64,000 nt of DNA. It comes from Macrostomum lignano. Taxonomy: Eukaryota. Shown here in pieces: positions 8,032 to 55,821 of this stretch; position 1 is the first letter of the stretch; each line of letters opens with the position of its first letter. Location: NCBI GenBank assembly GCA_002269645.1, contig NIVC01001776.1, forward strand, positions 337,990 to 401,989, in the 5' to 3' direction. Under the pieces are notes generated by a model. That model worked only from the letters and a program-made list of their open reading frames with translations. It did not search any database and was not told where the DNA came from. Position numbers and translations under genes: made by a program.

Positions 8032-11000
8032 ATGCAGCTCTGCCAGGTACTCCAGCCAGTGCTAATTATTCTAAATCTGGGAATCGCAACGCAGTCTTTT
8101 GACTTAGACTGCTCCATTAAAAAGCACAAAAGTGAGCATTTATTAACTTAAAAATATTTGACAATTGCCTTGTGTTTTGCTTTTAGTTTTTTTAAACGCT
8201 TCAATTTTAAACACTTCAAAAGACATTAAGTAATAAAACACTTCATTTTTATTAATGGCGTTAATTTCAGTCACACTGCAGCTGAGCAGGGCTGACGTTC
8301 TGCGCACCTGGCAACCCGGCGGTGCGCACTGCCGTTGGTGGGAGAGTCGGCAGTCAGAGACAAACCGATTCCCTGCTGCTGTGCGGTCCGGGCCTCGGTG
8401 GCTTGTGATGCAGCTGAGGCAGCCGATGATGCTGGAGGCGGTGAGCGTGCGAGACTGGGGTGAGTGACGCTGACCGACTCATTCTCATGATGCATGATGA
8501 GGCAGAGGGAGTCTGGGACACAGTGTGAGACAGTGTGAGACCAGCTAGCATCTAATTAGCACTCTGAGACAGTGTGAGACCAGCTAGCATCTAATTAGCT
8601 CTCTGAGACAGTGTGAGACCAGCTAGCATCTAATTAGCACTCTGAGACAGTGTGAGACCAGCTAGCATCTAATTAGCACTCTGAGACAGTGTGAGACCAG
8701 CTAGCATCTAATTAGCACTCTGAGACAGTGTGAGACCAGCTAGCATCTAATTAGCACTCTGAGACAGTGTGAGACCAGCTAGCATCTAATTAGCACTCTG
8801 AGACAGTGTGAGACCAGCTAGCATCTAATTAGCACTCTGAGACAGTGTGAGACCAGCTAGCATCTAATTAGCACTCTGAGACAGTGTGAGACCAGCTAGC
8901 ATCTAATTAGCACTCTGAGACAGTGTGAGACCAGCTAGCATCTAATTAGCACTCTGAGACAGTGTGAGACCAGCTAGCATCTAATTAGCACTCTGAGACA
9001 GTGTGAGACCAGCTAGCAGCCAAGCACTCGTGTTGCAGATCGCCAGTGGCACACAGCAGCTCCGGTCGGCTCGCCCGTGTCAGCGGTCGGAGCCTCGAGC
9101 CTCCCGCTGGAGCTGCAGCTGGAGGACCCGTGCCGCGCCAGCTGGGAGGCCTTCGGCAGTAGCGAATTTTGGATGCAGATTAGTAGCTCTAACCAGGTAC
9201 GTCATAACTATTTATATTTGAGGCTGGTTGTTTATGCGTGAGAATAGATTCTTAGCATGTTTGCCTTCTGTTTTTTCAGAAACCGATATCCTATATTCGT
9301 CTCGCAAGTGCAAAAGAGCTCAGCTTTTCTGCAATCAATATTTCTGGTAGGAAATGGTTTTTAATCTAGCGTATTTGAACTTTTTCAAAACTGAATATGT
9401 TATTTTGAAATTTCATCTTGATCCGGTCGAACGCACAGGCTACAAACCGACCTTGAAACTCGACCCACACGATGCAACAATGACACTTTTGAAACTGAAG
9501 GAGGCAAAAACTGTAACTTTCCATCTTATGGATTCAAGTTCAAGAGGTCTATCTGTTTCATGCTTTGTTCGTCGCAATCAATTGACTTTGAGGAGGGTTG
9601 TCGTTGTCAGAGAACGGGTAAGAACCTGTGTTTGTAGCTATTATGTGACTTGACTTTCTAGACTCAGCTGCAGGGGTTCTGGGCATTCGGATAGTCTAGA
9701 GAGTCCAGTAGGTGGATTGTCGCTCGCCCGGTAGCCCTTGGGTAGCGGACGAGCTGGCAGAGATTCTCGGGCCTGAAAACGTCTGAGAGGTGTCCGGGTT
9801 TGGGGCCAGAGGTTCACAAATTAAGGGCTTTGCATTCGCGACGCCAAAGAGGCGCATTTCCCGCTACGGATTTTCCCTGGAGGTGACAATGCTTAGCAAA
9901 ACTGACTCAAACCCACCCTGACCGCCCTGATGTCCCTGCGGTTGAGTCCAAGCAGGTAGCTATTGTGTGTCGAACTCGATGATACTAGAACTCATTAAGC
10001 CATTCTGAAAGCTAATCAGTTGATCGATCAAATCTATCCATTCACAGGCTTTTCCAGGAAGATTTTCGTTTAAGCTCAAGCCAATGATGAGGTGGCAAGG
10101 TTCTGAGCTAATCTGTTGCTATGGAAACCTGTCCAGTCCGGATCGTGGCAACTGTACTATTGTCAGGACAATCAGCGTGAAGTGTCAGTTTGAATTTTTC
10201 GTTCATTGTATTTCAAAATCGATTCAGTGATAGAAGAGAAACGATATTTTTCGGCCATTTTCAGTCGTGGCCAAGCGTACGGCACTGAGCGTGCCAAAGA
10301 AGTGGCTGGTCAACTCGTCTGTGCTGGTCAACTTCACCTCCGTTGAGGAGTATCCGCCTTCCAATCATTCTTGCGTTTTTAGATATGGAAATAATGGTGC
10401 CGGGGAACGCTTGGACCAAGTGAATGAGGTAATAATTAATGTTTTATTTATCTTTATTTACAATCTTTATTTCCTGGAAGCCCAAGGAAGTGACCTTTTA
10501 AGTCTTTCGTTTCAAGTTGACTTTGACTGGAAACTTTTGTGGAGCATTGCTACGAACGCCACTCACGAAGATTATGTAGACATCCATTTGAGCATTATTT
10601 ATATCAAAACTTTTCTTGAAACTGTTGGGATATTCAAAAACTATTCCTTTGGGAATGTAGGACCTAGACTACAAACCTAACGAATACAAACCTAAAGAAT
10701 ACAAACCTAAAGAATACAAACCTAAAGAATACAAACCTAAAGAATACAAACCTAAAGAATACAAACCTAAAGAATACAAACCTAAAGAATACAAACCTAA
10801 AGAATACAAACCTAAAGAATTCAAACCTAAAGAATACAAGCCTAAAGAATTCAAACCTAAAGAATTCAAACCTAAAGAATTCAAACCTAAAGAATACAAA
10901 CCTAAAGACTACAACCTAAAGAATACAAACCTAAAGACTACAACCTAAAGAATACAAACCTAAAGACTAAAAACCTAAAGACTACAAACCTAAAGACTAA

Positions 11001-14000
11001 AAACCTAAAGACTACAAACCTAAAGAATACAAACCTAAAGAATACAAACCTAAAGAATAAAAACCTAAAGACTACAAACCTAAAGACTAAAAACCTAAAG
11101 ACTACAAACCTAAAGACTACAAACCTTTAGAGACTACAGACCTAAAGTCTTCAAACCTAAAGACTACAAACTACTCTGAGTTATAATCCAATTGTAATAC
11201 AAATATAACGTTTTGAGTGTCTCACTTGTCATGATATCGTCTCCCCTTGCCCGATCCAGTCTGTCCGAGTGACTCTGTCCAGAACGGGCTTTCCTGCCTA
11301 CACCACCATCTCCCAGTTTCTGGTGAAGGCTGACCGATCAAAGCTTGGCGGCGAGTTGTACTGTCGCTCAACAATGAGTTGGTCAATTGCTACTCTGTAC
11401 AGAACGTTCCATGTTAGCCCTTCAACTATAGTTGGTGAGCTAGATTGCGCAACACTGTGTCATATTACATGCCAACTTGTTTACAGCTTGTCTTATTGAT
11501 GAAGCGAAGAAATTCCCTGCTCAAATTTCTAGAGCCCTGTCAGGCGAGCATAAGTTTCGGCTTGAGTTCCTACTGGCTTGAGGGCGGCATTGAGAACGTT
11601 ACACTCACATCGCCGAATTGCGGCGCAATTGGTCACTCGTGCGAACTTGTCCAGAATGATTTGACTGTTCTGTCCAAGCTCAATAGAACTTATGTACGTT
11701 TTAACGATATTATTCATTTACAACATTTTATTACATCATGTTTTAAATTTGAAGTATTTTTGCTCCTACAAATACATTTATGCTCCTACACTGTAGGTCA
11801 TCGGTGACACCAGCACGCATCAACTGCAAGTGAGGCATTGGATGAGGAATCACAGAAATTGGCAAATTGTCTGCCGTGCCAACCAATCAGATCTCCATAG
11901 CAACCGAGTTTTAAGCCAAACTACCCCAATTGTGTTTTGTGAGTCATCTTCACATTGCCACATTGTTGGATAAGTGGCAAATTATGTTGAAGCTCCAGGG
12001 GGGTTTCACAAAACTTAAAAAGCGACCTTGACTGAGATCAAATTAAGCTAGATCTCAAAGAGTTTTTCCCGAAAGACGTTCTGTGTGGTAAACCCCCCGC
12101 CTCTAATGTCGGTCATAACTTGAGGGCACATAAAGGGTAGAACTCTCAATATGAATTATGAAGCGCAGCAGTCGTATTTTTGCAACTTTTGTCAAAGCTC
12201 CACATTCAAAGCACTTGATTTTCAGACAAAGGCAACCTAACAATACAATCAGCATCCAACGCTCTGAAATGGTCAGTGCAGATTCAAGAAGGTCGGCCTC
12301 AAATGTCAAACGTGAGCTGCAGTCTCACCAATGTGAGTCAACCTTGCAGAAGCTCTGATTCTAGATCCATTTTCTAAGATGAACTAAAAAGGCAAACATC
12401 CCTGGTGGCTATCTTGCAGGTAACAACGATCTCGACGTCCATCAGAAGCTACTCGGCCACGGTGAAAATCGTCTGCGTTGGCCTGCAGATGAAAAATGGC
12501 GACAAAATATTTCAAGTGACAGCGATAAAAACTATCGGAGGCGAACAGAATGCCCATAATGCTATAATAAATCATATGGAAGCGGGGAAGGGTAAGTTTC
12601 AAGGACTAATGAAAAGTATATCAATGACTGCTGGATGATAGTCCGCTTCAACTCTTCAAAACTTCAAAACCGGACCTGATGCTTCAAATAAAGTAATAAA
12701 ATAATAATGATAATGATAGTAATATTCGCTTATCTCGTACACCTGTCTCAATCGGGCCAGATGTGCAACCGACAGCTCAGCCGCAGCTATTGCGCAGCGC
12801 ATCTGAAGGCTGCGTACGGCTGTTCAGTCCAAGGACTGGGGGGTCGCCACACTCACCCTCAATTACCCCAGCTAATGCTGGCACCCATTTTACAGCTGGG
12901 TAAACTGAAGCAATGCAGAGATAAGTGTCTTGCGCAAGGACGCCAATCGTTCCAAGTGGGTCGAGAATCGAACCCCCGACCTTTCAGTCGGTAGTCCGAC
13001 GCTCTAACCACTAGGCTAAAACCCCCTTGAATGGCACCCTAACACTGTTATCTGAGAACGACAAAATTCAGTGCGATTCTGCGCGAACTTTGAGATCCAG
13101 TCCTTAGAAATCTTCATTTTTTAGCCCAACGGACGGACCATTGTACTTGAAGGGGTTGTTATTGGATCTCGCGGCGTCTCTAAACAAAGTTATCAATTGC
13201 AGTTGCTTTAAGTCGAACTTCAAGCGATGATTCCCCGTAGGTCACTCGGAGCATTATGCCTTCGAAACCGTAATACTACTAGTGCGTGCGAGACCTAACA
13301 ACCTGTCCTAATTCCCTGGCACCCTAGTATGACGGCCCCTAAACCTTACAGCCTCCCCCAAAGCAAAAACCAAGACCCAACACTAATCCTAAATTTCGCT
13401 GAATAAAAATCAACAATTTCAGAAAACAGCTTAAGCCAAAACACGCCAACTACGTGCGATACTCTCCGTCTGGTTCTGTTCACCACTGTGGTCTGCGGTT
13501 TGCTCAGCGTGGCCTCCGTGATTGGCTGTGCCACCATTATGCTCCGGCGAGCTGCGGCAGTAGCGGCTGTGAGTCTGGTTTCCTGGAATTTGGTTGCGAA
13601 AATAATTATTCTTAGGAGGCAAGTAGGCACTCTGGCGCAAAACCTGATACTGGGGAGAAGCTACTAGGGAGAAGCTACTGGGGAGAAGCTACTGAGGAGA
13701 AGCTACTGGGGAGAAGCTACTGAGGACAAGCTACTGGGGAGAAGCTACTGAGGAGAAGCTACTGAGGAGAAGCTACTGGGGAGAAGCTACTGAGGAGAAT
13801 CTACTTAGGAGAAGCTACTGGGGAGAAGCTACTAGGGAGAAGCTACTGAGGAGAAGCTACTGAGGAGAAGCTAGTGAGGAGAAGCTATTGAGGAGAAGCT
13901 ACTGAGGAGAAGTTGCTGAAGAGAAGCTACTGAGGAGAAGCTACTGAGGAGAAGCTACTGGGGAGAAGCTACTGAGGAGAAGCTACTGAGGAGAAGCTAC

Positions 14001-16570: not shown

Positions 16571-16790
16571 CGCATCTGAAGGCTGCGTGCGGCTGTTCAG
16601 TCCAAGGACTGGCCACACACATCCTCAATACTCCAGCTAATGCTGGTACCCATTTTACTGCTGGGTGAACTGAAGCAATGCAGAGTTAAGTGTCTTGTTC
16701 AAGGACACAAATTGTTCCGAGTGGGTCGAGAATCGAACCCCCAACCTTCAAGTCGTGAGTCCGACGCTTTAGCCAGCAAGCTACAACCTT
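16571..16790 (-). mobile_element. tRNA-derived SINE family 1, 3'-truncated copy
   Basis: Aligns by eye with 12810-13020. Confidence 0.8.
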
Positions 16791-17718: not shown

Positions 17719-20700
17719 ATGATGACTAAAGGTTTAGGAACAATTTTGTTATTAATGGCTTTATGGAAAGCTGAGGCTTTTGGCACTAAAAAATTCGGTA
17801 AGAATTTCGAATACGAGTAGCTTACCGAAAATGCAGTATCTGATGCTCATCTGTACAAGTTGTGAAGTCTTCGTTTCAGTGTCAGTGCTGCTGCGCAGGA
17901 CTGACGTTCTGCGCACCTGGCAACCCAGCGGTGCGCACTGTCGTTGGTGGGAGAGTCGGCAGTCAGAGACAAACCGATCCCCTGTTGCTGTGCGGTCCGG
18001 GCCTCGGTGGCTTGTGATGCAGCTGAGGCAGCCGATGCTGCTGCAGGTGGTGAGCGTGCGAGACTGGGGTAAGTGACGCTGACCGACTCATTCTCATGAA
18101 GCATGATGAGGCAGAGGGAGTTTGGGACACAGAGTGTGAGAGAGTGTGAGACCAGCTAGCATCTAATTAGCACTCTGAGACAGTGTGAGACCAGCTAGCA
18201 TCTAATTAGCACTCTGAGACAGTGTGAGACCAGCTAGCATCTAATTAGCACTCTGAGACAGTGTGAGACCAGCTAGTATCTAATTAGCACTCTGAGACAG
18301 TGTGAGACCAGCTAGTATCTAATTAGCACTCTGAGACAGTGTGAGACCAGCTAGTATCTAATTAGCACTCTGAGACAGTGTGAGACCAGCTAGCATCTAA
18401 TTAGCACTCTGAGACAGTGTGAGACCAGCTAGTATCTAATTAGCACTCTGAGACAGTGTGAGACCAGCTAGCATCTAATTAGCACTCTGAGACAGTGTGA
18501 GACCAGCTAGCATCTAATTAGCACTCTGAGACAGTGTGAGACCAGCTAGCATCTAATTAGCACTCTGAGACAGTGTGAGACCAGCTAGCATCTAATTAGC
18601 ACTCTGAGACAGTGTGAGACCAGCTAGCATCTAATTAGCACTCTGAGACAGTGTGAGACCAGCTAGCATCTAATTAGCACTCTGAGACAGTGTGAGACCA
18701 GCTAGCATCTAATTAGCACTCTGAGACAGTGTGAGACCAGCTAGCATCTAATTAGCACTCTGAGACAGTGTGAGACCAGCTAGCATCTAATTAGCACTCT
18801 GAGACAGTGTGAGACCAGCTAGCATCTAATTAGCACTCTGAGACAGTGTGAGACCAGCTAGCATCTAATTAGCACTCTGAGACAGTGTGAGACCAGCTAG
18901 CATCTAATTAGCACTCTGAGACTGTGTGAGACCAGCTAGCATCTAATTAGCACTCTGAGACAGTGTGAGACCAGCTAGCATCTAATTAGCACTCTGAGAC
19001 AGTGTGAGACCAGCTAGCATCTAATTAGCACTCTGAGACAGTGTGAGACCAGCTAGCATCTAATTAGCACTCTGAGACAGTGTGAGACCAGCTAGCATCT
19101 AATTAGCACTCTGAGACAGTGTGAGACCAGCTAGCATCTAATTAGCACTCTGAGACAGTGTGAGACCAGCTAGCATCTAATTAGCACTCTGAGACAGTGT
19201 GAGACCAGCTAGCATCTAATTAGCACTCTGAGACAGTGTGAGACCAGCTAGCATCTAATTAGCACTCTGAGACAGTGTGAGACCAGCTAGCATCTAATTA
19301 GCACTCTGAGACAGTGTGAGACCAGCTAGCATCTAATTAGCACTCTGAGACAGTGTGAGACCAGCTAGCATCTAATTAGCACTCTGAGACAGTGTGAGAC
19401 CAGCTAGCATCTAATTAGCACTCTGAGACAGTGTGAGACCAGCTAGCAGCCAAGCACTCGTGTTGCAGATGGCCAGTGGCACGCAGCAGCTCCGGTCGGC
19501 TCGCCCGTGTCAGCGGTCGGAGCCTCGAGCCTCCCGCTGGAGCTGCAGCTGGAGGATCCGTGCCGCGCGAGCTGGGAGGCCTTGAACGGTAGCGAATTTT
19601 GGATGCAATTTAATAGCTCTAACGAGGTACGTCATAACTATTTATATTTGAGGCTGGTTGTTTATGCGTTACTCGTAGAATAGATTTTTAGCATGTTTGC
19701 CTTCTTGTTTTTTTCAGAAACCGATATCCTATATTCGTCTGTCAAGTTCAAAAGAGCTTAGCTTTTCTCTAATCTGTATTTACGGTAGGAAAATAATTTT
19801 TAATCTAAGCGTATTTGAACTTTTAAAAAACTGAATATGTTATTTTGAAATTTCATCTTGATCCGGTCGAACGCACAGGCTACAAACCGACCTTGAAACT
19901 CGACCCACACGATGCAACAATGACACTCTTGAAACTGAAGGAGGCAAAAACTGTAACTTTCCATCTTATGGATTTAAGTTCAAGAGTTCAATCTGTTTCA
20001 TGCTTTGTTTGTCGCAATCAATTGACTTTGAGGAGGGTTGTCGTTGTCAGAGAACGGGTAAGAACCTGTGTTTGTAGCTATTATGTGACTTGACTTTCTA
20101 GACTCAGCTGCAGGGGTTCCGGGCATCGAGATACTCTGGAGAGTCCAGGCAGGAGGTGGATGGTCGCTCGCCCGGTAGCCCTTGGGTAGTGGACGAGCTG
20201 GCAAAGATTCTCGGGCCTGAAAACGTCTGAGAGGTGTCCGGGTTTGGGGCCAGAGGTTCACAAATTAAGGGCTTTGCATTCGCGACGCCAAAGAGGCGCA
20301 TTTCCCGCTACGGATTTTCCCTGGAGGTGACAATGCTTAGCAAAACTGACTCAAACCCACCCTGACCGCCCTGATGTCCCTGCGGTTGAGTCCAAGCAGG
20401 TAGCTATTGTGTGTCGAACTCGATGATACTAGAACTCATTAAGCCATTCTGAAAGCTAATCAGTTCATCGATCAAATCTATCCAGTCACAGGCTTTTCCT
20501 AGAAGATTTTCGTTTAAGCTCAAGCCAATGATGAGGTGGCAAGGTTCTGAGCTAATCTGTTGCTATGGAAACCTGTCCAGTCCGGATCGTGGCAACTGTC
20601 CCATTGTCAGGACAATTGGCGTGAAGTGTCAGTTTGAATTTTTCTTTTATTGTGTTTCAAAAGTGCATCAGTGATAGAAGAGAAACTGCATTTTTCGGCC

Positions 20701-23700
20701 ATTTTCAGTTGTGGCCAAGCGTACGGCACTGATCGGGGCTCTGTACAGTCATTCAGGGCTCTGTACAGTTTTACACCTATAAATCCATTTGTATGCACTT
20801 TTAATTGTAGTTCATGACGGAAGCTTCACTCTATCGGTCTCTCCGGTGTGGGTCTCGGGCAGGAAGATTTTCTTAGAAGCCGAAGCGCAGCGATTCTTTC
20901 CGGAGCCCAGGATTCAGTGTTCGATCAGGGCGGTGACGGAGCAGCCTTTGACAGTTGAGAGTCAGGTGAGGACAGGTGCACTGTCTTTGAGTGAGCGATA
21001 CCGCTGACAGCACGAGTTGGTCTTCAATCTGACCACCACACCACAACCCCAAGTTCCCAGTCACCGCGCCACCGCGTCACCGCGGCCTATCCTTACACAA
21101 AGCACACGTAAAATGCAGGTACCCCTCATTCTATGTCGTTTAACTTTCAGAAACGGTCTGTCGTGAAGGACAATGATAGCAGGGTTCTGCTGTCAGTGTG
21201 CTCAAGGTTCAGCTTTCACGCATCGCTCTCAATGCACGGAGGCCAAATTTTGTGCTGGGTTACTCTCACTGGGGATGAAGACTTGGTTGCTATGAAGTAC
21301 ATGTTAAATCACAGTCTAACTCAGATTAGCGGTGAGAAATGCGCGAGTTGAATTCAGACTTCCATATCTCAGTATTCTGTGTTACCTCTCCCATCACCCC
21401 TCACCCAGCTACCCCTCACCCAGCCACCCCTCACCCAGCCACTCCTCACCCAGCCACCCCTCACCCAGCCACCCCTCACCCAGCCAGCCCTCACCCAGCC
21501 ACCCCTCACCCAGCCAGCCCTCACCCAGCCACCCCTCACCCAGCCACCCCTCACCCAGCCGCTCGTTCGCACTGCAGAGCCGTGCCAGACGGCCGTATAC
21601 CTGGGCTCGAGTCCGCACTGGCAGGTGGGCCAGACCCGCCAGATCGCAGTGACCTCCAGCGCCTGCAGCATCTGGAACGTGAGCCACAGCTGCTGGCTGC
21701 TGCAGGCTGATGGCGCTTCACCCGTGCCGCTCCACAGAGTTGAAGTACGCTTGCACTGAGACTGGCCAAAGTGCTCAGAGAAGTGCAGAGCCTCACCTGT
21801 CCCAATCTGCACCCTCATTCGCATTGCAGCAGAGCAGCTTCAGCAGCGTTCACCAGCTGCTTGTGAGCAGGTCGATGGCTCACCAGAACTGGTCCGTTCG
21901 CTGCAGCGTCAACCAGTCAGGTGTGGTGTATGATGAGGCTGAGAGTCTGGAGCAGCTGCGACCGCCGATTTTCTGTGAGTGCCGGACAGTGCATGAAGCG
22001 AGTCCACTGTGAACGCTTTGCTTGAATGCGATTTCCAATTTCACTGCAGACCCGGCAAGCATTCGGGTAAATGGCACCGTTGAGAGCTCGCGACTGCACC
22101 TGGCTGTGGCTGCCTCCGACGCTCGGCCTCCGGTGTCATCTGTTGTCTGCCAGATCGCAAATTTCACTGTGGGTGTTTGATGCGAGCCCGAAAGAGGGCC
22201 GAATAAGCGCGCATGACATTAGCGTGCAGATGTATCTTTTTGCTATCATATTTTCTTTTCAAAGTTAAAATGCTGTGAGGAAAACGTTGCTTAAATGCTT
22301 ACGAGGCGCTGACTAGAGAACCCAGGTGATTGACTAGAGAACCCAGGTGATTGACTAGAGAACCCAAATGATTGACTAGAGAACCCAGGTGATTGACTAG
22401 ATAACCCAGGTGATTGACTAGAGAACCCAGGTGGTTGACTAGAGAACCCAGGTGATTGACTAGAGAACCCAAATGATTGACTAGAGAACCCAGGTGATTG
22501 ACTAGAGAACCCAGGTGGTTGATTAGAGAACCCAAATGATTGACTAGAGAACCCAGGTGGTTGACTAGAGAACCCAGGTGGTTGACTAGAGAACCCAGGT
22601 GGTTGACTAGAGAACCCAGGTGGTTGATTAGATGATTAGAGAACCCAGGTGGTTGATTAGATGATTAGAGAACCCAGGTGGTTGATTAGATGATTAGAGA
22701 ACCCAGGTGGTTGATTAGAGAACCCAAATGATTGACTAGAGAACCCAGGTGATTGACTAGAGAACCCAGGTGATTGACTAGAGAACCCAGGTGATTGACT
22801 AGAGAACCCAGGTGATTGACTAGAGAACCCAGGTGATTGACTAGAGAACCCAGGTGGTTGACTAGAGAACCCAGGTGGTTGGCTAGAGAACCCAAGTGGT
22901 TGATTTGATGATTAGAGAACCCAGGTGGTTGATTAGAGAACCCAAATGATTGACTAGAGAACCCAGGTGATTGACTAGAGAACCCAGGTGATTGACTAGA
23001 GAACCCAGGTGATTGACTAGAGAACCCAGGTGGTTGACTAGAGAACCCAGGTGACTGACTAGAGAACCCAGGTGATTGACTAGAGAACCCAGGTGATGGA
23101 CTAGCGCCCTTCTTACCCAGCCTTATTTAACCTAATATTTTAGACTATTCTGATTCTAGCAAGACTTGAACCGGCCAGGGAGAACTGCACTGACTTGACG
23201 GGAAAGCTGTAGCATAGGCCTGTGTCTTATTATTCTAACTTAAAGCCGTAGCTTTCAGATGCGCACTTGCGCCAGACTCGTGTGTTTGAGATGTGCTGCT
23301 TGCGTCGTGAGCGCCAATGTAATCTATTGGTGGGGCAATGAGTGCAGGATTGAAACCCCATCGCATCTGCTCACCAGCCAGCCCCTGTAGGACAATGAGG
23401 AGAAATGTGAATCTTGAACTCGATGTCAACTTGAGCACCGGAATGGAACCAAGCGCTCAGCTGTGGACCAAGCTGACTCATTGAACAAAATTCAAAGTCA
23501 AATCTCAATAACTGTCTTCATCCACAGAGTGTTCAACTGACGCGGATGCAAAACAGCCACACCTGGCAGGCAAACGGCAGCATTACACCACCAGCATGTG
23601 CATCGCTGAATAACGAATTGAATTTTCTCATCAACTGCACTGCTCAGCAGGACTTCAATGGCTCGACGATTTTTCAAACAAGCGATCAGGTCTTTCGAAA

Positions 23701-35944: not shown

Positions 35945-38900
35945 ATGAAAAGTACGCTTTGGCAACTGCTGCCTCTGCTGCTGAGCATGCGAGTTGCTGC
36001 ATCACTGGACTGCTCCGCTGTAAATCGCACGGGTGAGTCAGCTGCTTTTAGGGGCAGCTCAAAGACCAGCAATGCAAGGCTGCAAATATTTTGCGATAAA
36101 CTTTCCAGTGACAGTGCAGCTGAGCAGGGCAGACGTTCTGCGCACCTGGCAACCCAGCGGTGCGCACTGCCGTTGGTGGGAGAGTCGGCAGTCAGAGACA
36201 AACCGATTCCCTGCTGCTGTGCGGTCCGGGCCTCGGTGGCTTGTGATGCAGCTGAGGCAGCCGATAATGCTGGAGGCGGTTAGCGTGCGAGACTCGAGTG
36301 AGTGACGCTGACCGACTCATTCTCATGATGCATGATGAGGCAGAGGGAGTCTGGGACACAGAATGTGAGACAGTGTGAGACCAGCTAGCATCTAATTAGC
36401 ACTCTGTGACAGTTTGAGACCAGCTACTGTAGCATTCAAGCACTTTGAGACAGTGTGAGACCAGCTACTGTAGCATTCAAGCACTCTGAGACAGTGTGAG
36501 ACCAGCTGCGTCAGCCAGCTGTGGAGGATCCGTGCAGCGCCAGCAAGGATGCCTTCTGCATCGGCCGCTTGCGGAGTCATGATGGCTCCAGTGGCACCGC
36601 CGTGGTGAGTGAAAGGGAAAATTTGCTGTTTGTACGAGCGTATGCTGCACACTGTCTTCCACATTGTGAGGAACTCTGACATTCTGAGCACCCCTCTCAC
36701 TAGCAGCCAGCGGCCTTCTTTCTGTTTAGCGGCTACATGTGCCGGCAGCCTCTCCAATGGAGCGGTCTCCTTCTGCATGGTGAGGTCTTTCAATTTAGTG
36801 CTTTGATTCGCAGGTTATTGAGTTCGTTTCGCAGCGCCGCGAAACCGCTGTTCGCTGCTCAGTGCAGCAGGCTGATGGCGCTTCATCCGCAGTAAAATTT
36901 ATTCGCAGCACCGCACCCTCAGGCCGCACGGCCCCAATGCAGCTGAAGGAGACCAGAAACCCATTCTGCCTGAACTGCGAGCCCCTCACATTGAGAAACG
37001 GAGATCGCATTGGCTTCTCAGTGAGCAGCTGCGGCTCCAAGACTCCGAACTGCTCAGTTCGACTCGCGGATGGCAGCAGGCGGGAGGCTGAGTTGGTGAG
37101 CGACTGGCCGGCCTTGACTGACAGATTTTCCACTTTGAGTCTGAGAGCTCAGGATATTTTCTGTTAATTTCAGCTGAGCTCAGGACCGGGCGCTGGTCGG
37201 ACTCGAGTCACCCATTTTGAGTACCTTGTGGAGGATAAGGAAGTTCCGCGGACTCTGACCTGCAAGCAGGGCGGGGACCCAGCGGCTCTGCAGATTGAGA
37301 GGGAAATCGCTGTGACATGCAAGTCTTGCTGGATTTGCGGGTGCAGCTGTCATTCAGGGCTCTGTACAGTTTTACACCTATAAATCCATTTGTATGCACT
37401 TTTAATTGTAGTTCATGACGGAAGCTTCACTCTATCGGTCTCTCCGGTGTGGGTCTCGGGCAGGAAGATTTTCTTAGAAGCCGAAGCGCAGCGATTCTTT
37501 CCGGAGCCCAGGATTCAGTGTTCGATCAGGGCGGTGACGGAGCAGCCTTCGAAAGTTGAGAGTCAGGTGAGGACAGGTGCACTGTCTTTGAGTGGGCGAG
37601 TTTGGGTGAGCAGGACCGCTAACAGATCACAATTTGGGGTTGAAAATCTGACCTCCACGTGATCCACCCAATTTTCCAGTCACTTGTCATCCCAAACACT
37701 TTGCCCGCAACCTATCCTCACACAGACACTTAAACTTTGGGTGCCACTTAGTTTACACGTATACGAGTATCTTGTATATTGTTCAACTTCCAGAGCCGGT
37801 CTGTAGTGAAGGACAATGAAAACAGGGTTCTGCTATCAGTTCGCTCAAAGTTCAGATTTTACGCATCGCTCTCAATGGTCGGAAGCCAAATTCTGTGCTG
37901 GGTGAATCTGACTGGAGGCGAAGATCGTGTTACGAGTACTGTGAAGATAAAATTAAATCACAATATAACGTTGATAAGCGGTGAGAAATTGAAAAAAATT
38001 TGATTTACATATTTTATAGATATGAGCCACCCAGCCACCCCTCACCCAGCCACCCCTCACCCAGCCACCCCTCACCCAGCCACCCCTCACCCAGCCTTCC
38101 CTAACCCAGCCACCCCTCACCCCGCCAACCCTCACCCAGCCACCCCTCACCCAGCCACCCCTCACCCAGCCACCCCTCACCCAGCAACCCCTCACCCAGC
38201 AACCCCTCACCCAGCAACCCCTCACCCAGCCACCCCTCACCCAGCCACCACTCACCCAGCCACCCCTCACCCAGCCACCCCTCACCCAGCCACCCCTCAC
38301 CCAGCCACCACTCACCCAGCCACCCCTCACCCAGCAACCCCTCACCCAGCCACCCCTCACCCAGCCACCCCTCACCCAGCCACTCACTCGCACTGCAGAG
38401 CCGTGCCAGACGGCCGTAGACCTGGGCTCGAGTCCGTACTGGCAGGTGAACCAAACCCGCCACATCGCAGTGACCTCCAGCGCCTGCAGCATCTGGAACG
38501 TGAGCCACAGCTGCCGGCTGCTGCAGGCTGATGGCGCTTCACCCGTGCCGCTCCACAGAGTTGAAGTACGCTTGCACTGAGATTGGCCAAAGTGCTCAGA
38601 GAAGTGCAGAGCCTCACCTGTCCCCATCTGCACCCTCATTCGCATTGCAGCAGAGCAGCTTCAGCAGCGCTCACCAGCTGCAGGTGAGCAGGTCGATGGC
38701 TCACCAGAACTGGTCCGTTCGCTGCAGCGTCAACCAGTCAGGTGTGGTGTATGATGAGGCTGAGAGTCTGGAGCAGCTGCGACCGCCAATTTTCTGTGAG
38801 TGCCGAACAGTGCATGAAGCGAGTCAAATGTGAACGCTTTGCTTGAATGCGATTTTCAATTTCACTGCAGACCCGGCAAGCATTCAGGTAAATGGCAGCA

Positions 38901-44985: not shown

Positions 44986-45076
<91 letters not shown>

Positions 45077-46923: not shown

Positions 46924-49900
46924 ATGAAGGATTTTTACAAAATTTTGCTGTGGCTGCTGCTCTGCAACACGAAATTCACCGCCGGCAACTCAGACTGCTC
47001 CTCCACGCGCCAAGCCGGTGAGGCAAGCGAAATTGAAATGCATATCAACTCCAGCTAACAGGAAGACTGAAAGTAAGCAGTGTCTACTACATTTTCCAGT
47101 GACAGTGCAGCTGAGCAGGGCTGACGTTCTGCGCACCTGGCAACCCAGCGGTGCGAACTGCCGTTGGTGGGAGAGTCGGCAGTCAGAGACAAACCGATTC
47201 CCTGCTGCTGTGCGGTCCGGGCCTCGGTGGCTTGTGATGCAGCTGAGGCAGCCGATGATGCTGGAGGCGGTGAGCGTACGAGACTGGGGTGAGTGACGCT
47301 GACCGACTCATTCTCATGATGCATGATGAGGCAGAGGGAGTCTGGAACACACAGTGTGAGACAGTGTGAGACCAGCTAGCATCTAATTAGCTCTCTGAGA
47401 CAGTGTCAGACCAGCTAGCATCTAATTAGCACTCTGAGACAGTGTGAGACCAGCTAGCATCTAATTAGCACTCTGAGACAGTGTGAGACCAGCTAGCATC
47501 TAATTAGCACTCTGAGACAGTGGGAGACCAGCTAGCAGCCAAGCACTCTGAGACAGTGTGAGACCAGCTAGCAGCCAAGCACTCGTGTTGCAGATGGCCA
47601 GTGGCTCGCAGCAGCTCCGGTCGGCTCGCCCGAGTCAGCGGTCGGAGCCTCGAGCCTCCCGCTGGAGCTGCAGCTGGAGGATCCGTGCCGCGCCAGCTGG
47701 GAGGCCTTCGGCAGCAGCGACCGCTGGAGGCAGATTGGGGTGAACGGAGTAGATCAAGTAAGCTGCTTCATTTAAACTATCTTAGCCTAATAATGCAATT
47801 AATAAATCCATCCATTTTACACTTCAGCCCGTAGTTCGTTTCCTTGTGCTAAGTAGCTTGAGAACTGCTGGACTGAGCTGGAGGGCCGTCTCATTAACAG
47901 GTCTCTGAGAAATTTTGAAATTTTGAAGCAATCACTAAATCATAGCTTATTGTGAATTAAGTGCTTTAGAAGCAGGTGCATTTTTTCTTGTAGGGCGCTT
48001 TCTACCGCTGAGCCTCACGGTAACTGACAACCGTTTTTGCCCTCTGAGAGACCTGTCCGCCTTGCACGATGGAGTTGAAGCCTGCTTCTCTGTTTCAAGA
48101 TGTACCAGCGGATCGATTCGATGCTTCTTTAACCTAAGCAATGGCGCAACTCTGGAGCCGAGACTGGTCTGCTCAACTCTTCTTTATAGCGAGCTATCAA
48201 TACTTCTTCTTGCACTGACTTCATACAAAATTCGCTTTTTCAGCTACGAAGCCAAAAGCAGCAAGCTGAATACGAATTTCTGGCTGCACGGAGCACTGCT
48301 CATTTGTCTTCTGTCTGATCGCCCAGGGATTCGAATCGAGCAGACCATTGGAATCGTTGGTGAGAAAGAAGTGTCTGCCTGAGTTAAAAAATGTATTATA
48401 AGTCCGCTTTGAAGATTACAAAGCGAAACATGCACTTTTCAGTCACACCAAGTGTTGAACTGTCGTTATCAACCGTGTGGGTGATTGGTCGCAGAGCCAA
48501 GGTGCACTTTGTCTCAAGCCCGGCTTATCCTCCTCAGCAGCACAGGTGCCAAATTATCTCTGGCAGCAGCACCTGGGAACTGACTGAGTATTCTAGCAAG
48601 GTTAGTATAGTATTACATTACTGTTGAACTCGCTAATGCGTTGCTGATTCGTCTATAGTTTTCCATGATATATAATGTATTTAAACTTTCAGATGAGACA
48701 AGTTTACGTCAGGAACAGCATCAACATGTCGCTAACTGAAGTGAAGTCTGAATTTGTAGTCACAGTCACGTCAGCCATGCTGAATGGCACCGTGAGATGC
48801 AGTAGCAACCATAAAAGTACAAGTCAAGAAGTCAAGAAGGATATCGTTATTTCAAGCATCAGCGGTAAGTGCTTGCATTAGAGAATCTCCTATACGCCCG
48901 ATTGGAAGAGCCATAAAGATCTCCTCATTTCAGAGCCTTGCAGAACTGCCATTCGTGTAGACAACATCCAGTACTCGTATCAGGTTGTACAAGTGACGTC
49001 ACTGAGATGCAGCATTTGGAATGTTCAGCACAGCTGCTGGCTTGTCAAGCCCAAAGAAGATATCACACAGCGTCTAATTAAGCTATCTGTACGATTTTTG
49101 CTATTGTAATAATTCTTATTATTCAGAATTTACTGCAACAATATCTGATCTCTTCTATTGCAGCAAGACGGCTTCAGCAGCACTCACAGGTTGAATATTA
49201 TGAAACAAGAGCAGAAAACAGACTGGCTAGTGAGATGCAGCGTTAATCAGTCGGGAGTGACGTACCCGGATGTGGAAACTGAGTTAGCAAGCGATGATGA
49301 CAGTGAGTCAAGATTTAAAGGTTTTTTTACCACTTTAATCTACACTGCACGTTGCTGCGTTTATATTATTAACGAGCTTATACAGCTTGTATTCGTTAGT
49401 ATTCTGTTTATCGTCATTTGTGCGACTTTTGGTAGCACTTGGGTAGCGAGTAGGCCATCTAAACTGGCCAGTCCACTGACATCTTAAACAACTATCCTTA
49501 ATCGTAAAATTGTCAGGAATTGCATTGTGTAACTCTTGCGAGCCTAAGGGTTCGATGTGTAACTAACTCTGCCACTTACTAACCCCACTTTCTTCAGCTT
49601 TCTACTATCAGTGGGGACTGAGTTGCATAATTTTGCTGATTTTATCTGCCCTCGGCCTCATCCTGAGCTGCATGATTATTCGAAGAATTCGCCGCGCTAA
49701 ATCAGCAAAGCCAAACTCGACTTCAAGTAGAAGTTCGACATTCCCAGGACGACGTACCCTCCTCTCGAGTGCGGCCACCTCGCCGCAGGCACAGGTAGGG
49801 CTAGCCACAGATTTAGTTTGTACATTAGGGCACGCATGTAAGTGTCAAATACTGGTGTTTTGATGAAGAATAGCTTTAAACTAAAAGAAAATTCTAGCTA

Positions 49901-52475: not shown

Positions 52476-52790
52476 GGGGTGTAGCCTAGTGATTAGAGTT
52501 TCAGACTCACGACTGCAAGGTCGGGGGTTCGATTCCCGATTATACTAGAACAACTGGTGTTCTTGAAAAAGACACTTAACTCTATATTGCTTTAGTTCAC
52601 CCAGCTTTAAAATGGGTGCCAGCATTAGCTGGGTGATTAAGGGTGGGTGTGGCGACCCCCACCCAGTCCTTGGACTGAACAGCCGTACGCAGCCTTCAGA
52701 TGCGCAACGCAATAGCTGCGGCTGAGCTGTCGGTTGCACATCTGGCCATTCGGGCAGGTGTAATCAATATTATCATTATTAATTATTAAT
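52476..52790 (+). mobile_element. tRNA-derived SINE, family 1
   Basis: GGGGTGTAGCCTAGTGATTAGAG...GGTTCGATTCC head and AT-rich tail. Confidence 0.85.
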
Positions 52791-53954
52791 TACATACATA
52801 TAGTTGTACGTAGTATCAACTGTTATCTGAAGACTCGATCATAGCAACTGAAATTTTTCGAGTTTTTTCAACTCGGTTGTGCACTGCATTGCAGATAACA
52901 TCCATCTACTCGTATTCTAGTATCGTCTAAAGCTTTCAATATACCACAATAGAAAATGCGTATGTAATTTTCATCTTTTTGAACGTAAATTGGTTCAGAG
53001 ACAACCTCAAAGTCGTATAGTAGAATTTTTTTAAATTCAAGATGCCATCAAGCTTGATTGTACAGCAGCGTTAGGTTTAGGTAATTTAAGCGCTTAACTC
53101 GTTTCTGCGGAATCTGAACTTAGATTACTACATTATAGTGGTCCCTGAAGAACTTGGAAGACCGTATTCTCAAATAAAAACCTTCTCTGACGCACCTGCA
53201 ATTGGCTCCAATACTGTCGGACAGCGCAACGGCGATTTTAATCAAATTTAAGACCACAACAGAAATGTGGCGTCTCTCGTCAAAGCGTACAACCAGAGAT
53301 TCAGTTTCGTCTCTCCTGCCTCGATGCTGCTTCCGGATGAATGGTTGTTTAACACTCTGTGCCAATCTGTGTCACAAACAGAAGCATCTGTTAAAACAAG
53401 AAACACTGAACTTCGCTAGCTCCAGGTAAATTTAAGGCTCGAAAAACTTCTACAACTACAAAATATTAACAGCTGAAAAACATAATCCAACAAGCCAATT
53501 TGCTCAACAAGAAGCGAAAACGAATACCAGATGAATAACGATCTTGAATTCATTCTGCTGCTGTTGCTGAGCTCAAAACTTGCATGCAATGCTCTGGTCT
53601 GCACTGATGCAAGTCACAAGGGTCAGTCGAGTTACTCACTGCCTTTTGAGACTTTTCTTCATGCCTCATCCGAGTAAAACTAAGCGAATCTTTGGGGATG
53701 AATATTTCAGTGACAGTGCAGCTGAGCAGGGCTGACGTTCTGCGCACCTGGCAACCCAGCGGTGCGCACTGCTGTTGGTGGGAGAGTCGGCAGTCAGAGA
53801 CAAACCTCTGCTGCTGTGCGGTCCGGGCCTCGGTGGCTTGTGATGCAGCTGAGGCAGCCGATGATGCTGGAGGCGGTGAGCGTACGAGACTGGGGTGAGT
53901 GACGCTGACCGACTCATTCTCATGATGCATGATGAGGCAGAGGGAGTCTGGGAC

Positions 53955-54258
53955 ACAGAGTGTGAGACAATGTGAGACCAGCTAGCATCTAATTAGCACT
54001 CTGAGACAGTGTGAGACCAGCTAGCATCCAATTAGCACTCTGAGACAGTGTGAGACCAGCTAGCATTTAATTAGCACTCTGAGACAGTGTGAGACCAGCT
54101 AGCATCTAATTAGCACTCTGAGACAGTGTGAGACCAGCTAGCATCTAATTAGCACTCTGAGACAGTGTGAGACCAGCTAGCATCTAATTAGCACTCTGAG
54201 ACAGTGTGAGACCAGCTAGCATCTAATTAGCACTCTGAGACAGTGTGAGACCAGCTAG
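53955..54258. repeat. 39-bp minisatellite in intron 2 of receptor E (~8 units)
   Basis: Same unit as in A and B. Confidence 0.95.
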
Positions 54259-55821
54259 CAGCCAAGCACTCGTGTTGCAGATGGCCAGTGGCACACAGCA
54301 GCTCCGGTCGGCTCGCCCGTGTCAGCGGTCGGAGCCTCGAGCCTCCCGCTGGAGCTGCAGCTGGAGGATCCGTGCCGCGCCAGCTGGGAGGCCTTCGGCA
54401 GCAGCGACCGGTGGAGGCACCTCGGAAGAGCTTGCAATGAAGTAGCAACGTTTGCCTTGAACCTGTAGTGTACCTATGCATGATCGGATTATATATTGAA
54501 AGTAAAAAGCAAGTGCTTTTTTCTGCTCCAGAGCACAGTCCGGTACATACTGGTCAGGAGCTGGACGAATGTTCCGCTAAGTTGGAGTGCCATGAAACTG
54601 TCAGGTCTTTATTAAAATATTTACAGTCTGCCTACTTCTAACTGATGCGTTGATTTTTAAAACAATCGTGTGACAGGACGTGACGATTTTTTAGGTCCTG
54701 TTGCTCCACTGAACCTCACCGTGATGAACAGTTCCCAATGTCCGCTTAAAAACTTGCAACTCATGAAGGCTGGGGACTTGGCGTGCCTCACAGTTTCGAG
54801 CTGTCTTGACGGCTCGCTTGGCTGTCTATTGAAGTATAGCAACGGGTTAACTCATCAACTGAGACAGGTGCGTTCATCTTTTTAAATAGATTTCGAATTG
54901 TGTGGAGCTTTGCAAAATTTTCTTATAAAACTCTCCACCACGGCAGCTGACCAGCCAGGCACAGCCTGCCGTGTTCGAACTCAGAGCCACCTCGACAATG
55001 CACGATGCGACACTCAGCTGCTTTCTGACAGACCGACCTGCTGAGCGCATTGAGTAGACTATTGGGATTTTATGTGAGAGAATTTTAATGAGAATGGGTT
55101 TTCTGGAAGCTGATATTGCATTTACTTCATCATGCTTATGTTTCAGTTCGCCCTGCCCACCTGTCAGTATCGGTGTCACCCGTGTGGGTCAGCGGCAGCA
55201 GCGTCACTGTGAATGTCACATCAGCTCCGACTTACCCAGCACTGCATCACAGCTGCAGCATCAGTTCTGCCAGCTCTGAGTGGCGTCTGGATGAAATTCG
55301 CACAAATGTGAGATGAACTCATGACTTCTCTTTCTACAGGACACTCCTGTGAGATCAGGTGTGCCTGACAGTTCTACTCTACTGTTGCTCATTGTTGACC
55401 TTCAAACAACTTCCAGGTAAAAACGGCTGTCGCAAAAGATGACAAAAATCAGGCCTTTGTGGTCGTGGCGTCTCAGTTCAGATTCCAGGTCAGCGCCGCG
55501 ATGCTGAACGGCACGTTGGAATGCGAGGGCAGGTTTGGAGTCCCAGCGAGGGAACACGTTGCAGTGCAGACCAATGAGCGCTTTTTCATATCAGCAATAA
55601 GTGGTGAGCTTTTTCCGAAAATCGTTTCCATTGTTGAATCTGTAAATTCCATTGTTGAATTGCATTTTTGTTTGCAATTCAGCTTTCTAATTTCGAACCA
55701 TTTGATTCCCTGTCTGCCTACATAAGATTCGAACTCCAAATATTTTCAAACTGCTTTTTAATCCCTGAAGAACTGGGACAGTTGACAGATATTATTGGGT
55801 CAATCGTACATTCCAAATGTC

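What the first reader, a model, noticed from the sequence alone, without database searches (positions are those of the whole stretch)
8271..54420. Exons 2-3 and their intron are homogenised across paralogs whose other exons are highly diverged
A block starting exactly at the exon-2 acceptor and ending late in exon 3 is nearly identical in A, B, D and E (exon 2 also in C). Exon 1, intron 1 and exon 4 onward are hard to align at the DNA level among A, C, D and E. The block contains the 39-bp VNTR (about 12, 33, 3-4, 5-6 and 8 units). This suggests recurrent gene conversion, possibly promoted by the VNTR, keeping a shared N-terminal binding domain on variable stalks and tails.
Basis: partly seen in the sequence, partly recalled or inferred. 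Interest (0 to 1): 0.75.

Follow-up and report, generated by a model that had tools for sequence, protein, structure and literature searches.

The report
Two exons homogenised across flatworm paralogs
In a tandem cluster of orphan receptor-like genes of the flatworm Macrostomum lignano, a small module (exon 2, a repeat-filled intron and most of exon 3) is kept about 97% identical among gene copies that are otherwise diverged beyond DNA alignment. This is a clear but conceptually familiar case of gene conversion, in which the module also serves as a crossover point that reshuffles gene halves.

Summary
Five same-strand paralogs (A-E) share a block that begins within 6 nt of the exon-2 acceptor and ends about 130-147 nt into exon 3. 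It contains the same 39-bp VNTR (3.5-33.6 units). Upstream identity equals that of shuffled sequence. Inside the block identity is 93-99%, in the intron as well as the exons. Synonymous differences are 0-7% in exon 2 and 58-93% (saturated) in other homologous exons, so this is homogenisation, not protein-level constraint. The organism is Macrostomum lignano. The family is species-restricted in the databases searched, has no Pfam domain, and encodes signal peptide, N-terminal domain, body, TM and tail. Five more block copies on two other contigs have the same boundaries. Support for recurrent interlocus conversion: a star-like block tree that conflicts with the flank trees, and a local GC3 spike (0.73-0.86 against 0.32-0.56). 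Comparing two copies of the cluster shows 5' exons and gene bodies recombined at the block. B is a recent A/C chimera, and C and E carry disabling deletions. A causal role for the VNTR is unproven because tandem repeats fill most introns here. The 'binding domain' label is untested. Verdict: real, a new member of a known kind, moderate interest.

The parts
8032..8131 (+). Gene A exon 1. It encodes a signal peptide ([33 protein letters not shown]), is followed by a phase-1 intron, and lies outside the block.
   Evidence: Found in the scan. It is identical to residues 1-33 of P0028 = PAA64192.1, BOX15_Mlig025426g1.
8271..8459 (+). Gene A exon 2 (189 nt), the start of the block.
8526..9018 (+). 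Gene A intron-2 VNTR: 39-bp unit, 12.6 copies.
9039..9196 (+). Gene A exon 3. The block ends at about 9170-9181.
17719..17797 (+). Gene B exon 1. This is its own signal-peptide type (MMTKGLGTILLLMALWKAEAFGTKKF).
   Evidence: sequence. It matches the N-terminus of P0046.
17880..19626 (+). Gene B block: exon 2 at 17880-18068, VNTR at 18137-19448 (33.6 units), exon 3 at 19469-19626. This is the most diverged copy, with 13 private substitutions in the 5' part.
20732..20748 (+). Chimeric junction in gene B. The A-like sequence ends and the C-like sequence begins, with a short duplication (GGGCTCTGTACAG) at the join.
35945..36032 (+). Gene C exon 1 (signal peptide).
36109..36606 (+). Gene C: exon 2 at 36109-36297, a degenerate VNTR remnant at 36366-36507, then a truncated exon-3 remnant. 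The exon-3 acceptor and first ~100 nt are deleted, so C is probably a pseudogene.
46924..47017 (+). Gene D exon 1 (signal peptide).
   Evidence: P0003 matches it at 100%.
47100..47757 (+). Gene D block: exon 2 at 47100-47288, VNTR at 47357-47573 (5.6 units), exon 3 at 47594-47757. The block ends at about 47736.
47828..47901 (+). Gene D exon 4. It encodes the C-terminal strands of the same N-terminal domain. It is homologous to A exon 4 (9280-9347) at the protein level but only 33% identical at the DNA level.
53531..53621 (+). Gene E exon 1 (signal peptide).
   Evidence: It resembles the N-terminus of P0004.
53711..54441 (+). Gene E block: exon 2 at 53711-53894 with a 5-bp deletion (frameshift leading to a stop in exon 3), VNTR at 53963-54260 (7.6 units), exon 3 at 54281-54441.

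Best explanation
The window holds a tandem cluster of a Macrostomum lignano-specific family of type I membrane proteins. Each has a signal peptide, an N-terminal domain of about 140 aa, a cysteine-containing body (UniProt labels family members Ig-like), a TM segment and a tyrosine-containing tail.

The paralogs are old: silent sites are saturated everywhere else in the genes. One module of about 0.45 kb of unique sequence is repeatedly overwritten between paralogs by homology-dependent interlocus gene conversion. The module is exon 2, intron 2 with its 39-bp VNTR, and the first ~135 nt of exon 3. It therefore evolves in concert.

Conversion can only run where donor and recipient are still alike, so the island sustains itself and its edges are frozen. 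The 5' edge sits where constraint begins, at the splice acceptor and exon. The 3' edge sits where subfamily-specific coding sequence begins.

Long-term conversion has left a local GC enrichment. The same island is the only long stretch of identity between diverged paralogs. It therefore also serves as the substrate for unequal crossing-over, which joins the promoter and exon 1 of one gene to the body of another.

Shown: homogenisation, its boundaries, tree incongruence, the GC spike, and the different 5'/body combinations in two assembled copies of the cluster.

Inferred: that conversion is ongoing rather than a few sweeps, that the edges are set by homology dependence plus constraint, that the rearrangements arose by crossing-over within the block, and any role of the VNTR as an initiator.
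For: 1. In exon 2, pS is 0.00-0.07 and pN is 0.02-0.08, and the 66-68 nt intron flank is 93-100% identical. In three other homologous exons, pS is 0.58-0.93 among the A, C/B3', D and E lineages.

2. The identity step occurs within 6 nt of the acceptor in six independent upstream types. The 3' end falls at the same place in nine copies.

3. Differences inside the block are almost all private, giving a star tree.

4. Over the 250-nt 5' part of the block, A differs from D and E by 6 nt and from a gene on another contig (L2_b) by 2 nt. It differs from B by 16 nt. Yet outside the block B is A's closest relative, at 4.7% divergence.

5. W_B and L001-G2 share an upstream region that is 7.2% diverged. 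Their block differences are split very unevenly, as expected if the G2 copy was overwritten.

6. Block exons have GC 0.64-0.73 and GC3 0.73-0.86. Other exons of the same genes have GC 0.40-0.53 and GC3 0.32-0.56. Exon 1 is mixed: GC3 is 0.55 in A and 0.77 in D.

7. In the family-wide protein alignment the block is nearly invariant, while the remainder is about 30-40% identical between subfamilies.

8. Distant M. lignano paralogs (P0037, P0043, P0042, P0040) carry a diverged version of the same domain. The intron-2 position is conserved in P0043, the only one whose genomic locus was examined. Exons 2-3 are therefore ancestral and not inserted.

9. The second cluster copy, L001, carries [A-type exon 1 + block + different body], [B-type exon 1 + block + A body] and [C-type exon 1 + block + C-like body]. 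The window carries [A-type exon 1 + block + A body]. The block of window A is G1-like at its 5' end and G2-like at its 3' end.
Against: - No formal GENECONV/RDP run was possible because the flanks cannot be aligned.
- Sites shared between paralogs that pass a four-gamete check (my reading) include CpG transitions, so mosaic tracts are not proven.
- The number and timing of conversion events are unknown.
[quoted passage not shown] The L001-versus-window rearrangement could be partly an assembly artefact at a 0.6-2 kb repeat. Short-read polishing could also have pulled the copies slightly towards each other.
- B has not been homogenised despite its long VNTR.
- dN/dS of about 1.3 for departures from the consensus gives no sign that selection maintains the sequence. 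Why this island exists at this domain is therefore unexplained.
Confidence: 0.78

Rival explanations
1. The block was recently spread as a mobile cassette, such as an exonised transposon or transduplicated exon pair, inserted into unrelated or pre-existing genes.
For: The 5' edge is very sharp and identical in all ten copies. The block tree is star-like.
Against: - There are no terminal inverted repeats at the block ends, and no target-site duplication is evident in the boundary alignments.
- Every protein with the block is a family member or a fused gene model containing one.
- Exon 4, which completes the same domain, is homologous but saturated at the DNA level.
- Distant paralogs have a diverged version of the same domain at the same place, with the intron-2 position conserved in the one examined. 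The recipient genes therefore already had these exons.
Confidence: 0.05
2. The similarity reflects extreme purifying selection on the protein or RNA, with no sequence exchange.
For: The block peptide is almost invariant across more than 30 gene models.
Against: - The intron flanks and the VNTR are as conserved as the exons, and synonymous sites are as conserved as replacement sites.
- Departures from the consensus are 56 nonsynonymous to 14 synonymous, which is about neutral.
- Copies with disabling deletions (C, E) are still 96-98% identical to the others.
- The block tree conflicts with the flank trees.
Confidence: 0.03
3. The near-identity, or the different 5'/body combinations, are artefacts of assembly or of consensus polishing in a repeat-rich, partly duplicated genome.
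For: In Mlig_3_7, 63.95% of bases are error-free by REAPR, and the assembly holds 180 Mb of duplicated blocks (PMC5730564). The block plus VNTR is a 0.6-2 kb repeat.
Against: - Polishing cannot create 97% identity from sequence that is otherwise unalignable.
- Each copy keeps private substitutions and its own VNTR variant map.
- Proteins predicted from the independent ML2-based annotation (UniProt A0A1I8...) show the same invariant block on different bodies.
- The NCBI annotation lists both Mlig025426g1 and g2, which have different first exons on the same body.
Confidence: 0.05
4. Conversion is real but is a selected device. The N-terminal domain must be identical in all family members, either for a common ligand or for homotypic contact, so converted alleles are favoured. 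This would parallel vertebrate paired receptors.
For: - The homogenised part is the distal extracellular module, while bodies, TM segments and tails differ.
- In the Siglec-11/16 paired receptors, repeated conversion of the exons that include the binding domain coincides with similar ligand preference (PMC5701461).
Against: - dN/dS is about 1.3 for private changes.
- Pseudogenised copies are homogenised too.
- The function and fold of the domain are unknown.
- The GC spike fits biased conversion without selection.
Confidence: 0.3

Closest known systems
Paired-receptor gene conversion in primates: SIGLEC11/SIGLEC16 (PMC5701461), also SIGLEC5/14 (PMC4042635) and CEACAM families (PMC2832619)
   Same: - Repeated interlocus conversion homogenises the exons, with their introns, that encode the distal extracellular domain of neighbouring membrane-receptor genes. 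The rest of each gene differs.
- Constraint on the converted exons looks relaxed.
- A copy disabled by a small deletion in exon 2 takes part (SIGLEC16P has a 4-bp deletion; gene E here has a 5-bp deletion).
- A simple repeat sits at a boundary: (GAAT)n in the Siglec case.
   Different: - Here many paralogs on at least three contigs are involved, not a pair.
- The domain is not a recognisable Ig V-set domain or lectin; it has no Pfam hit.
- The converted tract excludes the promoter and exon 1.
- The non-converted parts are saturated at silent sites rather than moderately diverged.
- An activating/inhibitory pairing has not been shown.
Human fetal G-gamma/A-gamma globin gene conversion bounded by simple sequence in IVS2 (Slightom, Blechl & Smithies 1980; recalled from memory, not read here)
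   Same: A conversion tract covers 5' exons plus part of an intron between tandem paralogs, and an intronic simple repeat is proposed as the initiating or limiting site.
   Different: The globin case involves two young duplicates. Here the repeat is a 39-bp minisatellite in the middle of the tract rather than at its edge, and many old paralogs are involved.
Minisatellite-associated recombination and conversion hot spots in humans (general knowledge, not tested here)
   Same: An array that is hypervariable in length (2-43 units among ten copies), with internal variant maps showing turnover, lies at the centre of a region of exchange.
   Different: No polarity or gradient of conversion around the array could be demonstrated. 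Tandem repeats are present in most introns of this genome without homogenised flanks.

Membership tests
Interlocus gene conversion / concerted evolution of a gene segment | A segment is far more similar between paralogs than the flanking homologous sequence is. | tested here: met
   The block is 93-99% identical, against 32-61% nucleotide identity in other homologous exons and random-level identity in intron 1.
Interlocus gene conversion / concerted evolution of a gene segment | The similarity extends equally to synonymous sites and to non-coding sequence. | tested here: met
   In exon 2, pS is 0.00-0.07 and pN is 0.02-0.08. The intron flank is 93-100% identical.
Interlocus gene conversion / concerted evolution of a gene segment | The tree of the segment is incongruent with the tree of the flanks. 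| tested here: met
   In the block, A is closer to D, E and L2_b (2-6 differences in 250 nt) than to B (16 differences). Outside the block only B aligns with A, at 4.7% divergence.
Interlocus gene conversion / concerted evolution of a gene segment | Mosaic tracts or shared polymorphisms exist between paralogs (a GENECONV-type signal). | tested here: inconclusive
   Variants are shared across non-orthologous copies: R21C, V59V, and H67L/A68T. By my reading of those calls they give all four gametes. Two of the sites are CpG transitions, so recurrent mutation is possible. No formal test was run.
Interlocus gene conversion / concerted evolution of a gene segment | Within a species, paralogs share substitutions that orthologs in sister species lack. 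| not testable with these tools
   No sequence from another Macrostomum species was retrievable. All database hits are M. lignano.
GC-biased gene conversion footprint | GC and GC3 are locally elevated, and the elevation is confined to the converted tract. | tested here: met
   Block exons have GC3 of 0.73-0.86. Other exons of genes A and D have GC3 of 0.32-0.56. Exon 1 is mixed (0.55 in A, 0.77 in D).
Exonised transposon / mobile cassette | Terminal inverted repeats or target-site duplications lie at the block ends. | tested here: not met
   Only weak internal inverted matches were found, none at the ends. The flanks of ten copies show no duplicated target.
Exonised transposon / mobile cassette | Copies occur at loci unrelated to the gene family. 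| tested here: not met
   All proteins carrying the block are family members or fused gene models. A whole-genome DNA scan could not be run.
Minisatellite-driven recombination hot spot | The array is hypervariable and shows internal turnover. | tested here: met
   The ten copies hold 2-43 units, each with a different variant map. L001-G3 shows an internal higher-order duplication.
Minisatellite-driven recombination hot spot | Exchange is initiated at or polarised towards the array. | tested here: inconclusive
   For: the block is roughly centred on the array (255 nt upstream, about 160 nt downstream) and differences are densest at the outer edges. The two copies with collapsed or degenerate arrays (C, L2_a) are somewhat more diverged. 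Against: B, with 34 units, is the most diverged copy. Other intronic tandem repeats have no homogenised flanks.
Paired activating/inhibitory receptors | A shared ectodomain is combined with opposing signalling tails: an ITIM against a charged TM residue with an adaptor. | not tested
   The tails differ and contain tyrosines, for example DPVYEEV in D and IPSVYLVL in the C-type protein P0021. No systematic motif or TM-charge analysis was done, and there are no expression data.
Galactose-binding-like / discoidin-type beta-sandwich domain (my impression from the sequence pattern) | A recognisable profile or fold match. | tested here: not met
   No hits in Pfam. The PDB profile search gave only a chance hit at E = 0.55. 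The AlphaFold2 models have pLDDT 37 and 52. Foldseek found nothing below E = 3.

The most novel reading that the evidence does not exclude
The block is not just a passive conversion island. It is a dedicated 'constant-region plus recombination cassette' of a lineage-specific receptor system. A break-prone minisatellite intron directs exchange so that one invariant distal domain is kept on every family member. Crossovers at the same site continually create new combinations of promoter/signal exon and receptor body. This would be a germline combinatorial diversification device in a flatworm.
Probability: 0.1. Interest if true: 0.8.

Novelty: new member of a known kind. Interest (0 to 1): 0.45.

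Why it matters
This is a very clean natural example of segment-limited concerted evolution. A 0.45-kb island stays 97-99% identical inside genes that are otherwise saturated at silent sites. Its edge is sharp to within 6 nt, it carries a GC footprint, and there is direct evidence that the island doubles as a crossover site that shuffles first exons and gene bodies.

It also flags an uncharacterised, species-restricted membrane-protein family with more than 30 gene models in a regeneration and sexual-selection model organism. The invariant distal domain of that family invites a functional test.

There is a practical consequence too. Many gene models in public M. lignano annotations are truncated or fused at this block and its VNTR. 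Read mapping, RNAi and knock-out designs against exons 2-3 will hit the whole family.

Tried and rejected
- The look-up of encoding contigs failed for the UniRef-only proteins P0005 and P0011. It worked for the NCBI-annotated P0046, P0026 and P0043.
- Pfam scans of the block peptide and of nine family proteins returned nothing.
- Rfam found nothing in the window.
- Two AlphaFold2 runs on the N-terminal region gave pLDDT 37 and 52.
- Foldseek against the PDB found nothing below E = 3.
- The PDB profile search gave only a chance hit. The fold, and my 'galactose-binding-like' impression, remain unsupported.
- A second large protein search with the 105-aa block peptide returned only seven short gene models and did not enumerate the family.
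- W_B and L001-G1 have VNTR arrays of identical length (1339 bp). I suspected a shared array. Their variant maps differ, so this is coincidence.
- Purifying selection as the cause was rejected.
- A transposon origin was rejected.
- Literature searches found no description of this family or of this conversion in M. lignano.
- For the AT-rich end of the window, Pfam, PHROGs, PDB and IMG/VR searches did not confirm the polymerase motifs I read by eye.
Full report
**What is in the sequence**

Tandem Repeats Finder recovers the five 39-bp arrays at the stated places with 12.6, 33.6, 3.5, 5.6 and 7.6 units. Self-BLAST of the window shows one family of cross-matches on the + strand. These run A 8264-9181, B 17874-19583, C 36102-36507, D 47093-47736 and E 53704-54420.

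Alignment of the 5' ends shows that similarity begins at the TTYCAG acceptor of exon 2. Alignment of the 3' ends shows that it fades about 130-147 nt into the 158-164 nt exon 3.

Apart from the block, only two other paralog relationships are detectable at the DNA level. A and B continue at 95.8% identity to 10288/20732. B and C share 20748-20998 with 37349-37599 (98.8%) and 21385-22140 with 38205-38961 (95.5%). Nothing else aligns among A, C, D and E.

**Gene structure and organism**

Exon 1 of each gene encodes a signal peptide and ends in phase 1, 75-139 nt upstream of exon 2. The coordinates are A 8032-8131, B 17719-17797, C 35945-36032, D 46924-47017 and E 53531-53621. Exon 1, exon 2 and exon 3 join in frame.

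A protein search identifies the organism as Macrostomum lignano. It returns only M. lignano proteins, 23 clusters in all. An exhaustive profile search finds 33 representatives, again all M. lignano where a name is available.

Gene A is the annotated PAA64192.1 (BOX15_Mlig025426g1, 702 aa). The proteins have a signal peptide, an N-terminal domain of about 140 aa (exons 2-4), a cysteine-containing body, a TM segment and a tyrosine-containing tail. No Pfam family matches any part. The UniProt names of members are mutually inconsistent.

**The block is homogenised, not merely conserved**

In exon 2 the proportion of synonymous differences between paralogs is 0.00-0.07 and the proportion of nonsynonymous differences is 0.02-0.08. 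The 66-68 nt of intron between the donor and the VNTR is 93-100% identical.

In three other exons that are homologous at the protein level, pS is 0.58-0.93 among the A, C/B3', D and E lineages. That is saturation, and nucleotide identity there is 0.32-0.61. One of these is exon 4, which completes the same domain.

Relative to the block consensus, ten copies carry 56 nonsynonymous and 14 synonymous departures. The ratio of sites is about 3.1 to 1, so dN/dS is near 1.3. Individual copies drift neutrally until they are overwritten.

**Edges**

I compared six independent upstream types. Mean pairwise identity is 0.29-0.31 from -80 to -7. Gapped identity there is 0.58, the same as after shuffling. 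Identity is 0.91 at -6 to -1 and 0.95-0.98 inside exon 2. The first 25 nt of exon 2 and the last part of the block carry the highest density of differences, as expected for eroding tract ends.

My reading, which is inference, is as follows. Conversion needs homology on both sides, so it cannot extend into sequence that has already diverged, and the island's edges can only move inward. On the 5' side the edge has settled where constraint begins, at the acceptor and coding sequence. On the 3' side it has settled where subfamily-specific residues begin.

**Beyond the window**

Two further loci from assembly GCA_002269645.1 were retrieved. L001 is a second copy of this cluster. L002 is a different family locus on another contig. 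They hold three and two more block copies. All have the same 5' and 3' limits and the same VNTR unit, with 2 to 43 copies. Each array has its own variant map.

Over the 250-nt 5' part of the block, copy A of the window differs by only 2 nt from L2_b, whose body belongs to another subfamily. It differs by 6 nt from D and E, and by 16 nt from B. Outside the block, B is the only copy that aligns with A, at 4.7% divergence. The block tree and the flank trees therefore disagree.

W_B and L001-G2 share an upstream region that is 7.2% diverged. Their 16 block differences are split very unevenly between the two lineages, as expected if G2 has been overwritten since they separated.

**GC footprint**

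Block exons have GC 0.64-0.73 and GC3 0.73-0.86. Other exons of genes A and D have GC 0.40-0.53 and GC3 0.32-0.56. Exon 1 is mixed, with GC3 of 0.55 in A and 0.77 in D. Intron 1 of A has GC 0.24. A tract-limited GC rise is what GC-biased conversion is expected to produce.

**The domain is ancestral and the cassette idea fails**

Distant M. lignano paralogs (P0037, P0043, P0042, P0040) align over the whole N-terminal domain at about 15-31% identity to the block-bearing sequence.

In the locus of P0043 (L003), exon 2 ends at the position equivalent to the exon 2/3 junction. The intron there holds a different repeat, (TCTG)79. The genes therefore had these exons and this intron before homogenisation.

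No inverted repeats sit at the block ends, and no target duplications appear in the boundary alignments. All block-bearing proteins are family members or fused models.

**The block as a crossover site**

Tiling L001 against the window and annotating it with family proteins gives three genes:
- G1: A-type upstream region and exon 1 (97-98% identical to window A), then the block, then a body that is absent from the window.
- G2: B-type exon 1, then the block, then the A body (98% identical). This is the annotated PAA51874.1, Mlig025426g2.
- G3: C-type exon 1, then the block, then a C-like body.

The window has A-type exon 1, the block and the A body. Window A's block is G1-like at its 5' end (2 differences in 250 nt) and closer to G2 at its 3' end (6 against 11 differences in 162 nt). 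The simplest reading is an unequal crossover inside the block or VNTR that deleted the G1 body and the G2 5' end, or the reciprocal duplication.

This would also explain why A/B similarity starts exactly at the block edge.

One caveat applies. Mlig_3_7 comes from a line with extra chromosomes, holds 180 Mb of duplicated blocks, and has many flagged errors (PMC5730564). The arrangement needs confirmation from long reads.

**State of the five genes**
- A is annotated as intact.
- B is a chimera. A-like sequence stops 25 nt into an A-type exon and is joined to C-type intron sequence with a 13-bp duplication. Its block carries 13 private substitutions, mostly nonsynonymous.
- C has lost the 3' part of the VNTR, the exon-3 acceptor and about 100 nt of exon 3. 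Its exon 4/5 region is fused and shortened.
- D looks largely intact, although I could not find an in-frame splice for one internal intron.
- E has a 5-bp deletion in exon 2 that leads to a stop in exon 3. A sequencing error cannot be excluded.

The cluster is thus a birth-and-death array in which damaged copies still belong to the homogenised set.

**The VNTR**

The array is hypervariable and sits in the middle of the tract. The two copies with collapsed or degenerate arrays (C, L2_a) are somewhat more diverged.

Against a causal role, tandem repeats fill nearly every intron of these genes and of the non-homogenised paralog. Simple and tandem repeats make up 15% of this genome. B, with 34 units, is the least homogenised copy. 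A causal role is therefore possible but not shown.

**The domain**

Two AlphaFold2 runs gave pLDDT 37 and 52. Foldseek and PDB profile searches gave nothing. The models are all-beta or mostly beta. By eye the sequence pattern reminds me of galactose-binding-like sandwiches, but that impression failed every test I could run. 'Binding domain' remains an assumption.

**Comparison with known systems**

The closest documented analogues are vertebrate paired receptors. In SIGLEC11/16, repeated conversion homogenises the exons that include the ligand-binding domain. Constraint on those exons is relaxed, a copy with a 4-bp deletion in exon 2 acts as a donor, and a (GAAT)n tract marks a boundary (PMC5701461). 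Related cases are SIGLEC5/14 and the CEACAM families.

The present case works like these but differs in several ways. It is a many-member, species-restricted orphan family in a flatworm. The tract excludes the promoter and exon 1. The unconverted parts are saturated at silent sites.

No paper on this family, or on conversion in M. lignano, was found.

**Verdict**

The finding is a new member of a known kind, of moderate interest.

Noticed in passing
window 57200-64000: GC drops abruptly to 27-30%. The stretch holds long intron-less ORFs at 57265-58251, 58335-60722 and 60787-62295 on the + strand, plus smaller ones. The 795-aa ORF has an Endonuclease VII hit (Pfam E = 4e-7, also PHROGs). By eye, the 795-aa and 502-aa ORFs carry family-B, protein-primed polymerase-like motifs: YADFEA, HNGSGYDFHF, YLDANNLYGG, KLMNNAFYGK, YADTDSL. 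No Pfam, PHROGs, PDB or IMG/VR search confirmed a polymerase. This may be a Maverick/Polinton-like or virus-derived insertion, cut off by the end of the window.
   Followed up: partly
window 17880-22300 (junction 20732-20748): Gene B is a recent chimera. An A-like 5' part (95-96% identical to A) is joined non-homologously, with a 13-bp duplication, to a C-like 3' part (95-99% identical to C).
   Followed up: yes
window 23785-23859 and 26829-27086: These are isolated exon-like pieces of another subfamily. The second matches the C-terminal 86 aa of P0019 at 94%. They lie between B and C without a block of their own. They could be remnants of a sixth member or the 3' end of the B chimera.
   Followed up: no
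window 10666-11171, 13648-14097, 14891-15693, 21395-21560, 22310-23104, 38028-38383; L003 4322-14244: Nearly every intron of these genes, and of a distant paralog on another contig, is filled by its own tandem repeat (period 4-54 bp, up to about 300 copies). Intronic VNTRs are the rule here and not a peculiarity of the block.
   Followed up: partly
window 1386-2175: A mariner-type transposase fragment (PF01359, E = 2.8e-10), with a 125-bp tandem duplication at 1386-1632.
   Followed up: no
window 12738-13025, 16571-16788, 52476-52778 (-), 55823-56124 (-); also 33387-33714, 40947-41340, 50337-50675 (-): Two families of dispersed repeats of about 220-350 bp at 82-89% identity lie in introns and spacers of the cluster. 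They look like SINE/MITE-type elements and were not classified.
   Followed up: no
window 30253-30576: An ORF fragment (HHAANHYCVSRLTLSLRLNDFYHRDELIIPQLSDESE...) lies between B and C. It reappears inside the fused gene model P0025 and weakly matches the N-terminal extension of P0010. This shows that public gene models merge neighbouring genes with family members.
   Followed up: partly
window 24238-24681 and 25453-25883: A 440-bp inverted repeat at 92% identity flanks about 770 bp. It may be a foldback or TIR element in the B-C spacer.
   Followed up: no
L001 23677-25333: The 43-unit VNTR of L001-G3 contains the terminal-type unit (normally next to the exon-3 acceptor) twice inside the array, each followed by the same variant pattern. 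This is evidence for a higher-order internal duplication by unequal exchange.
   Followed up: partly
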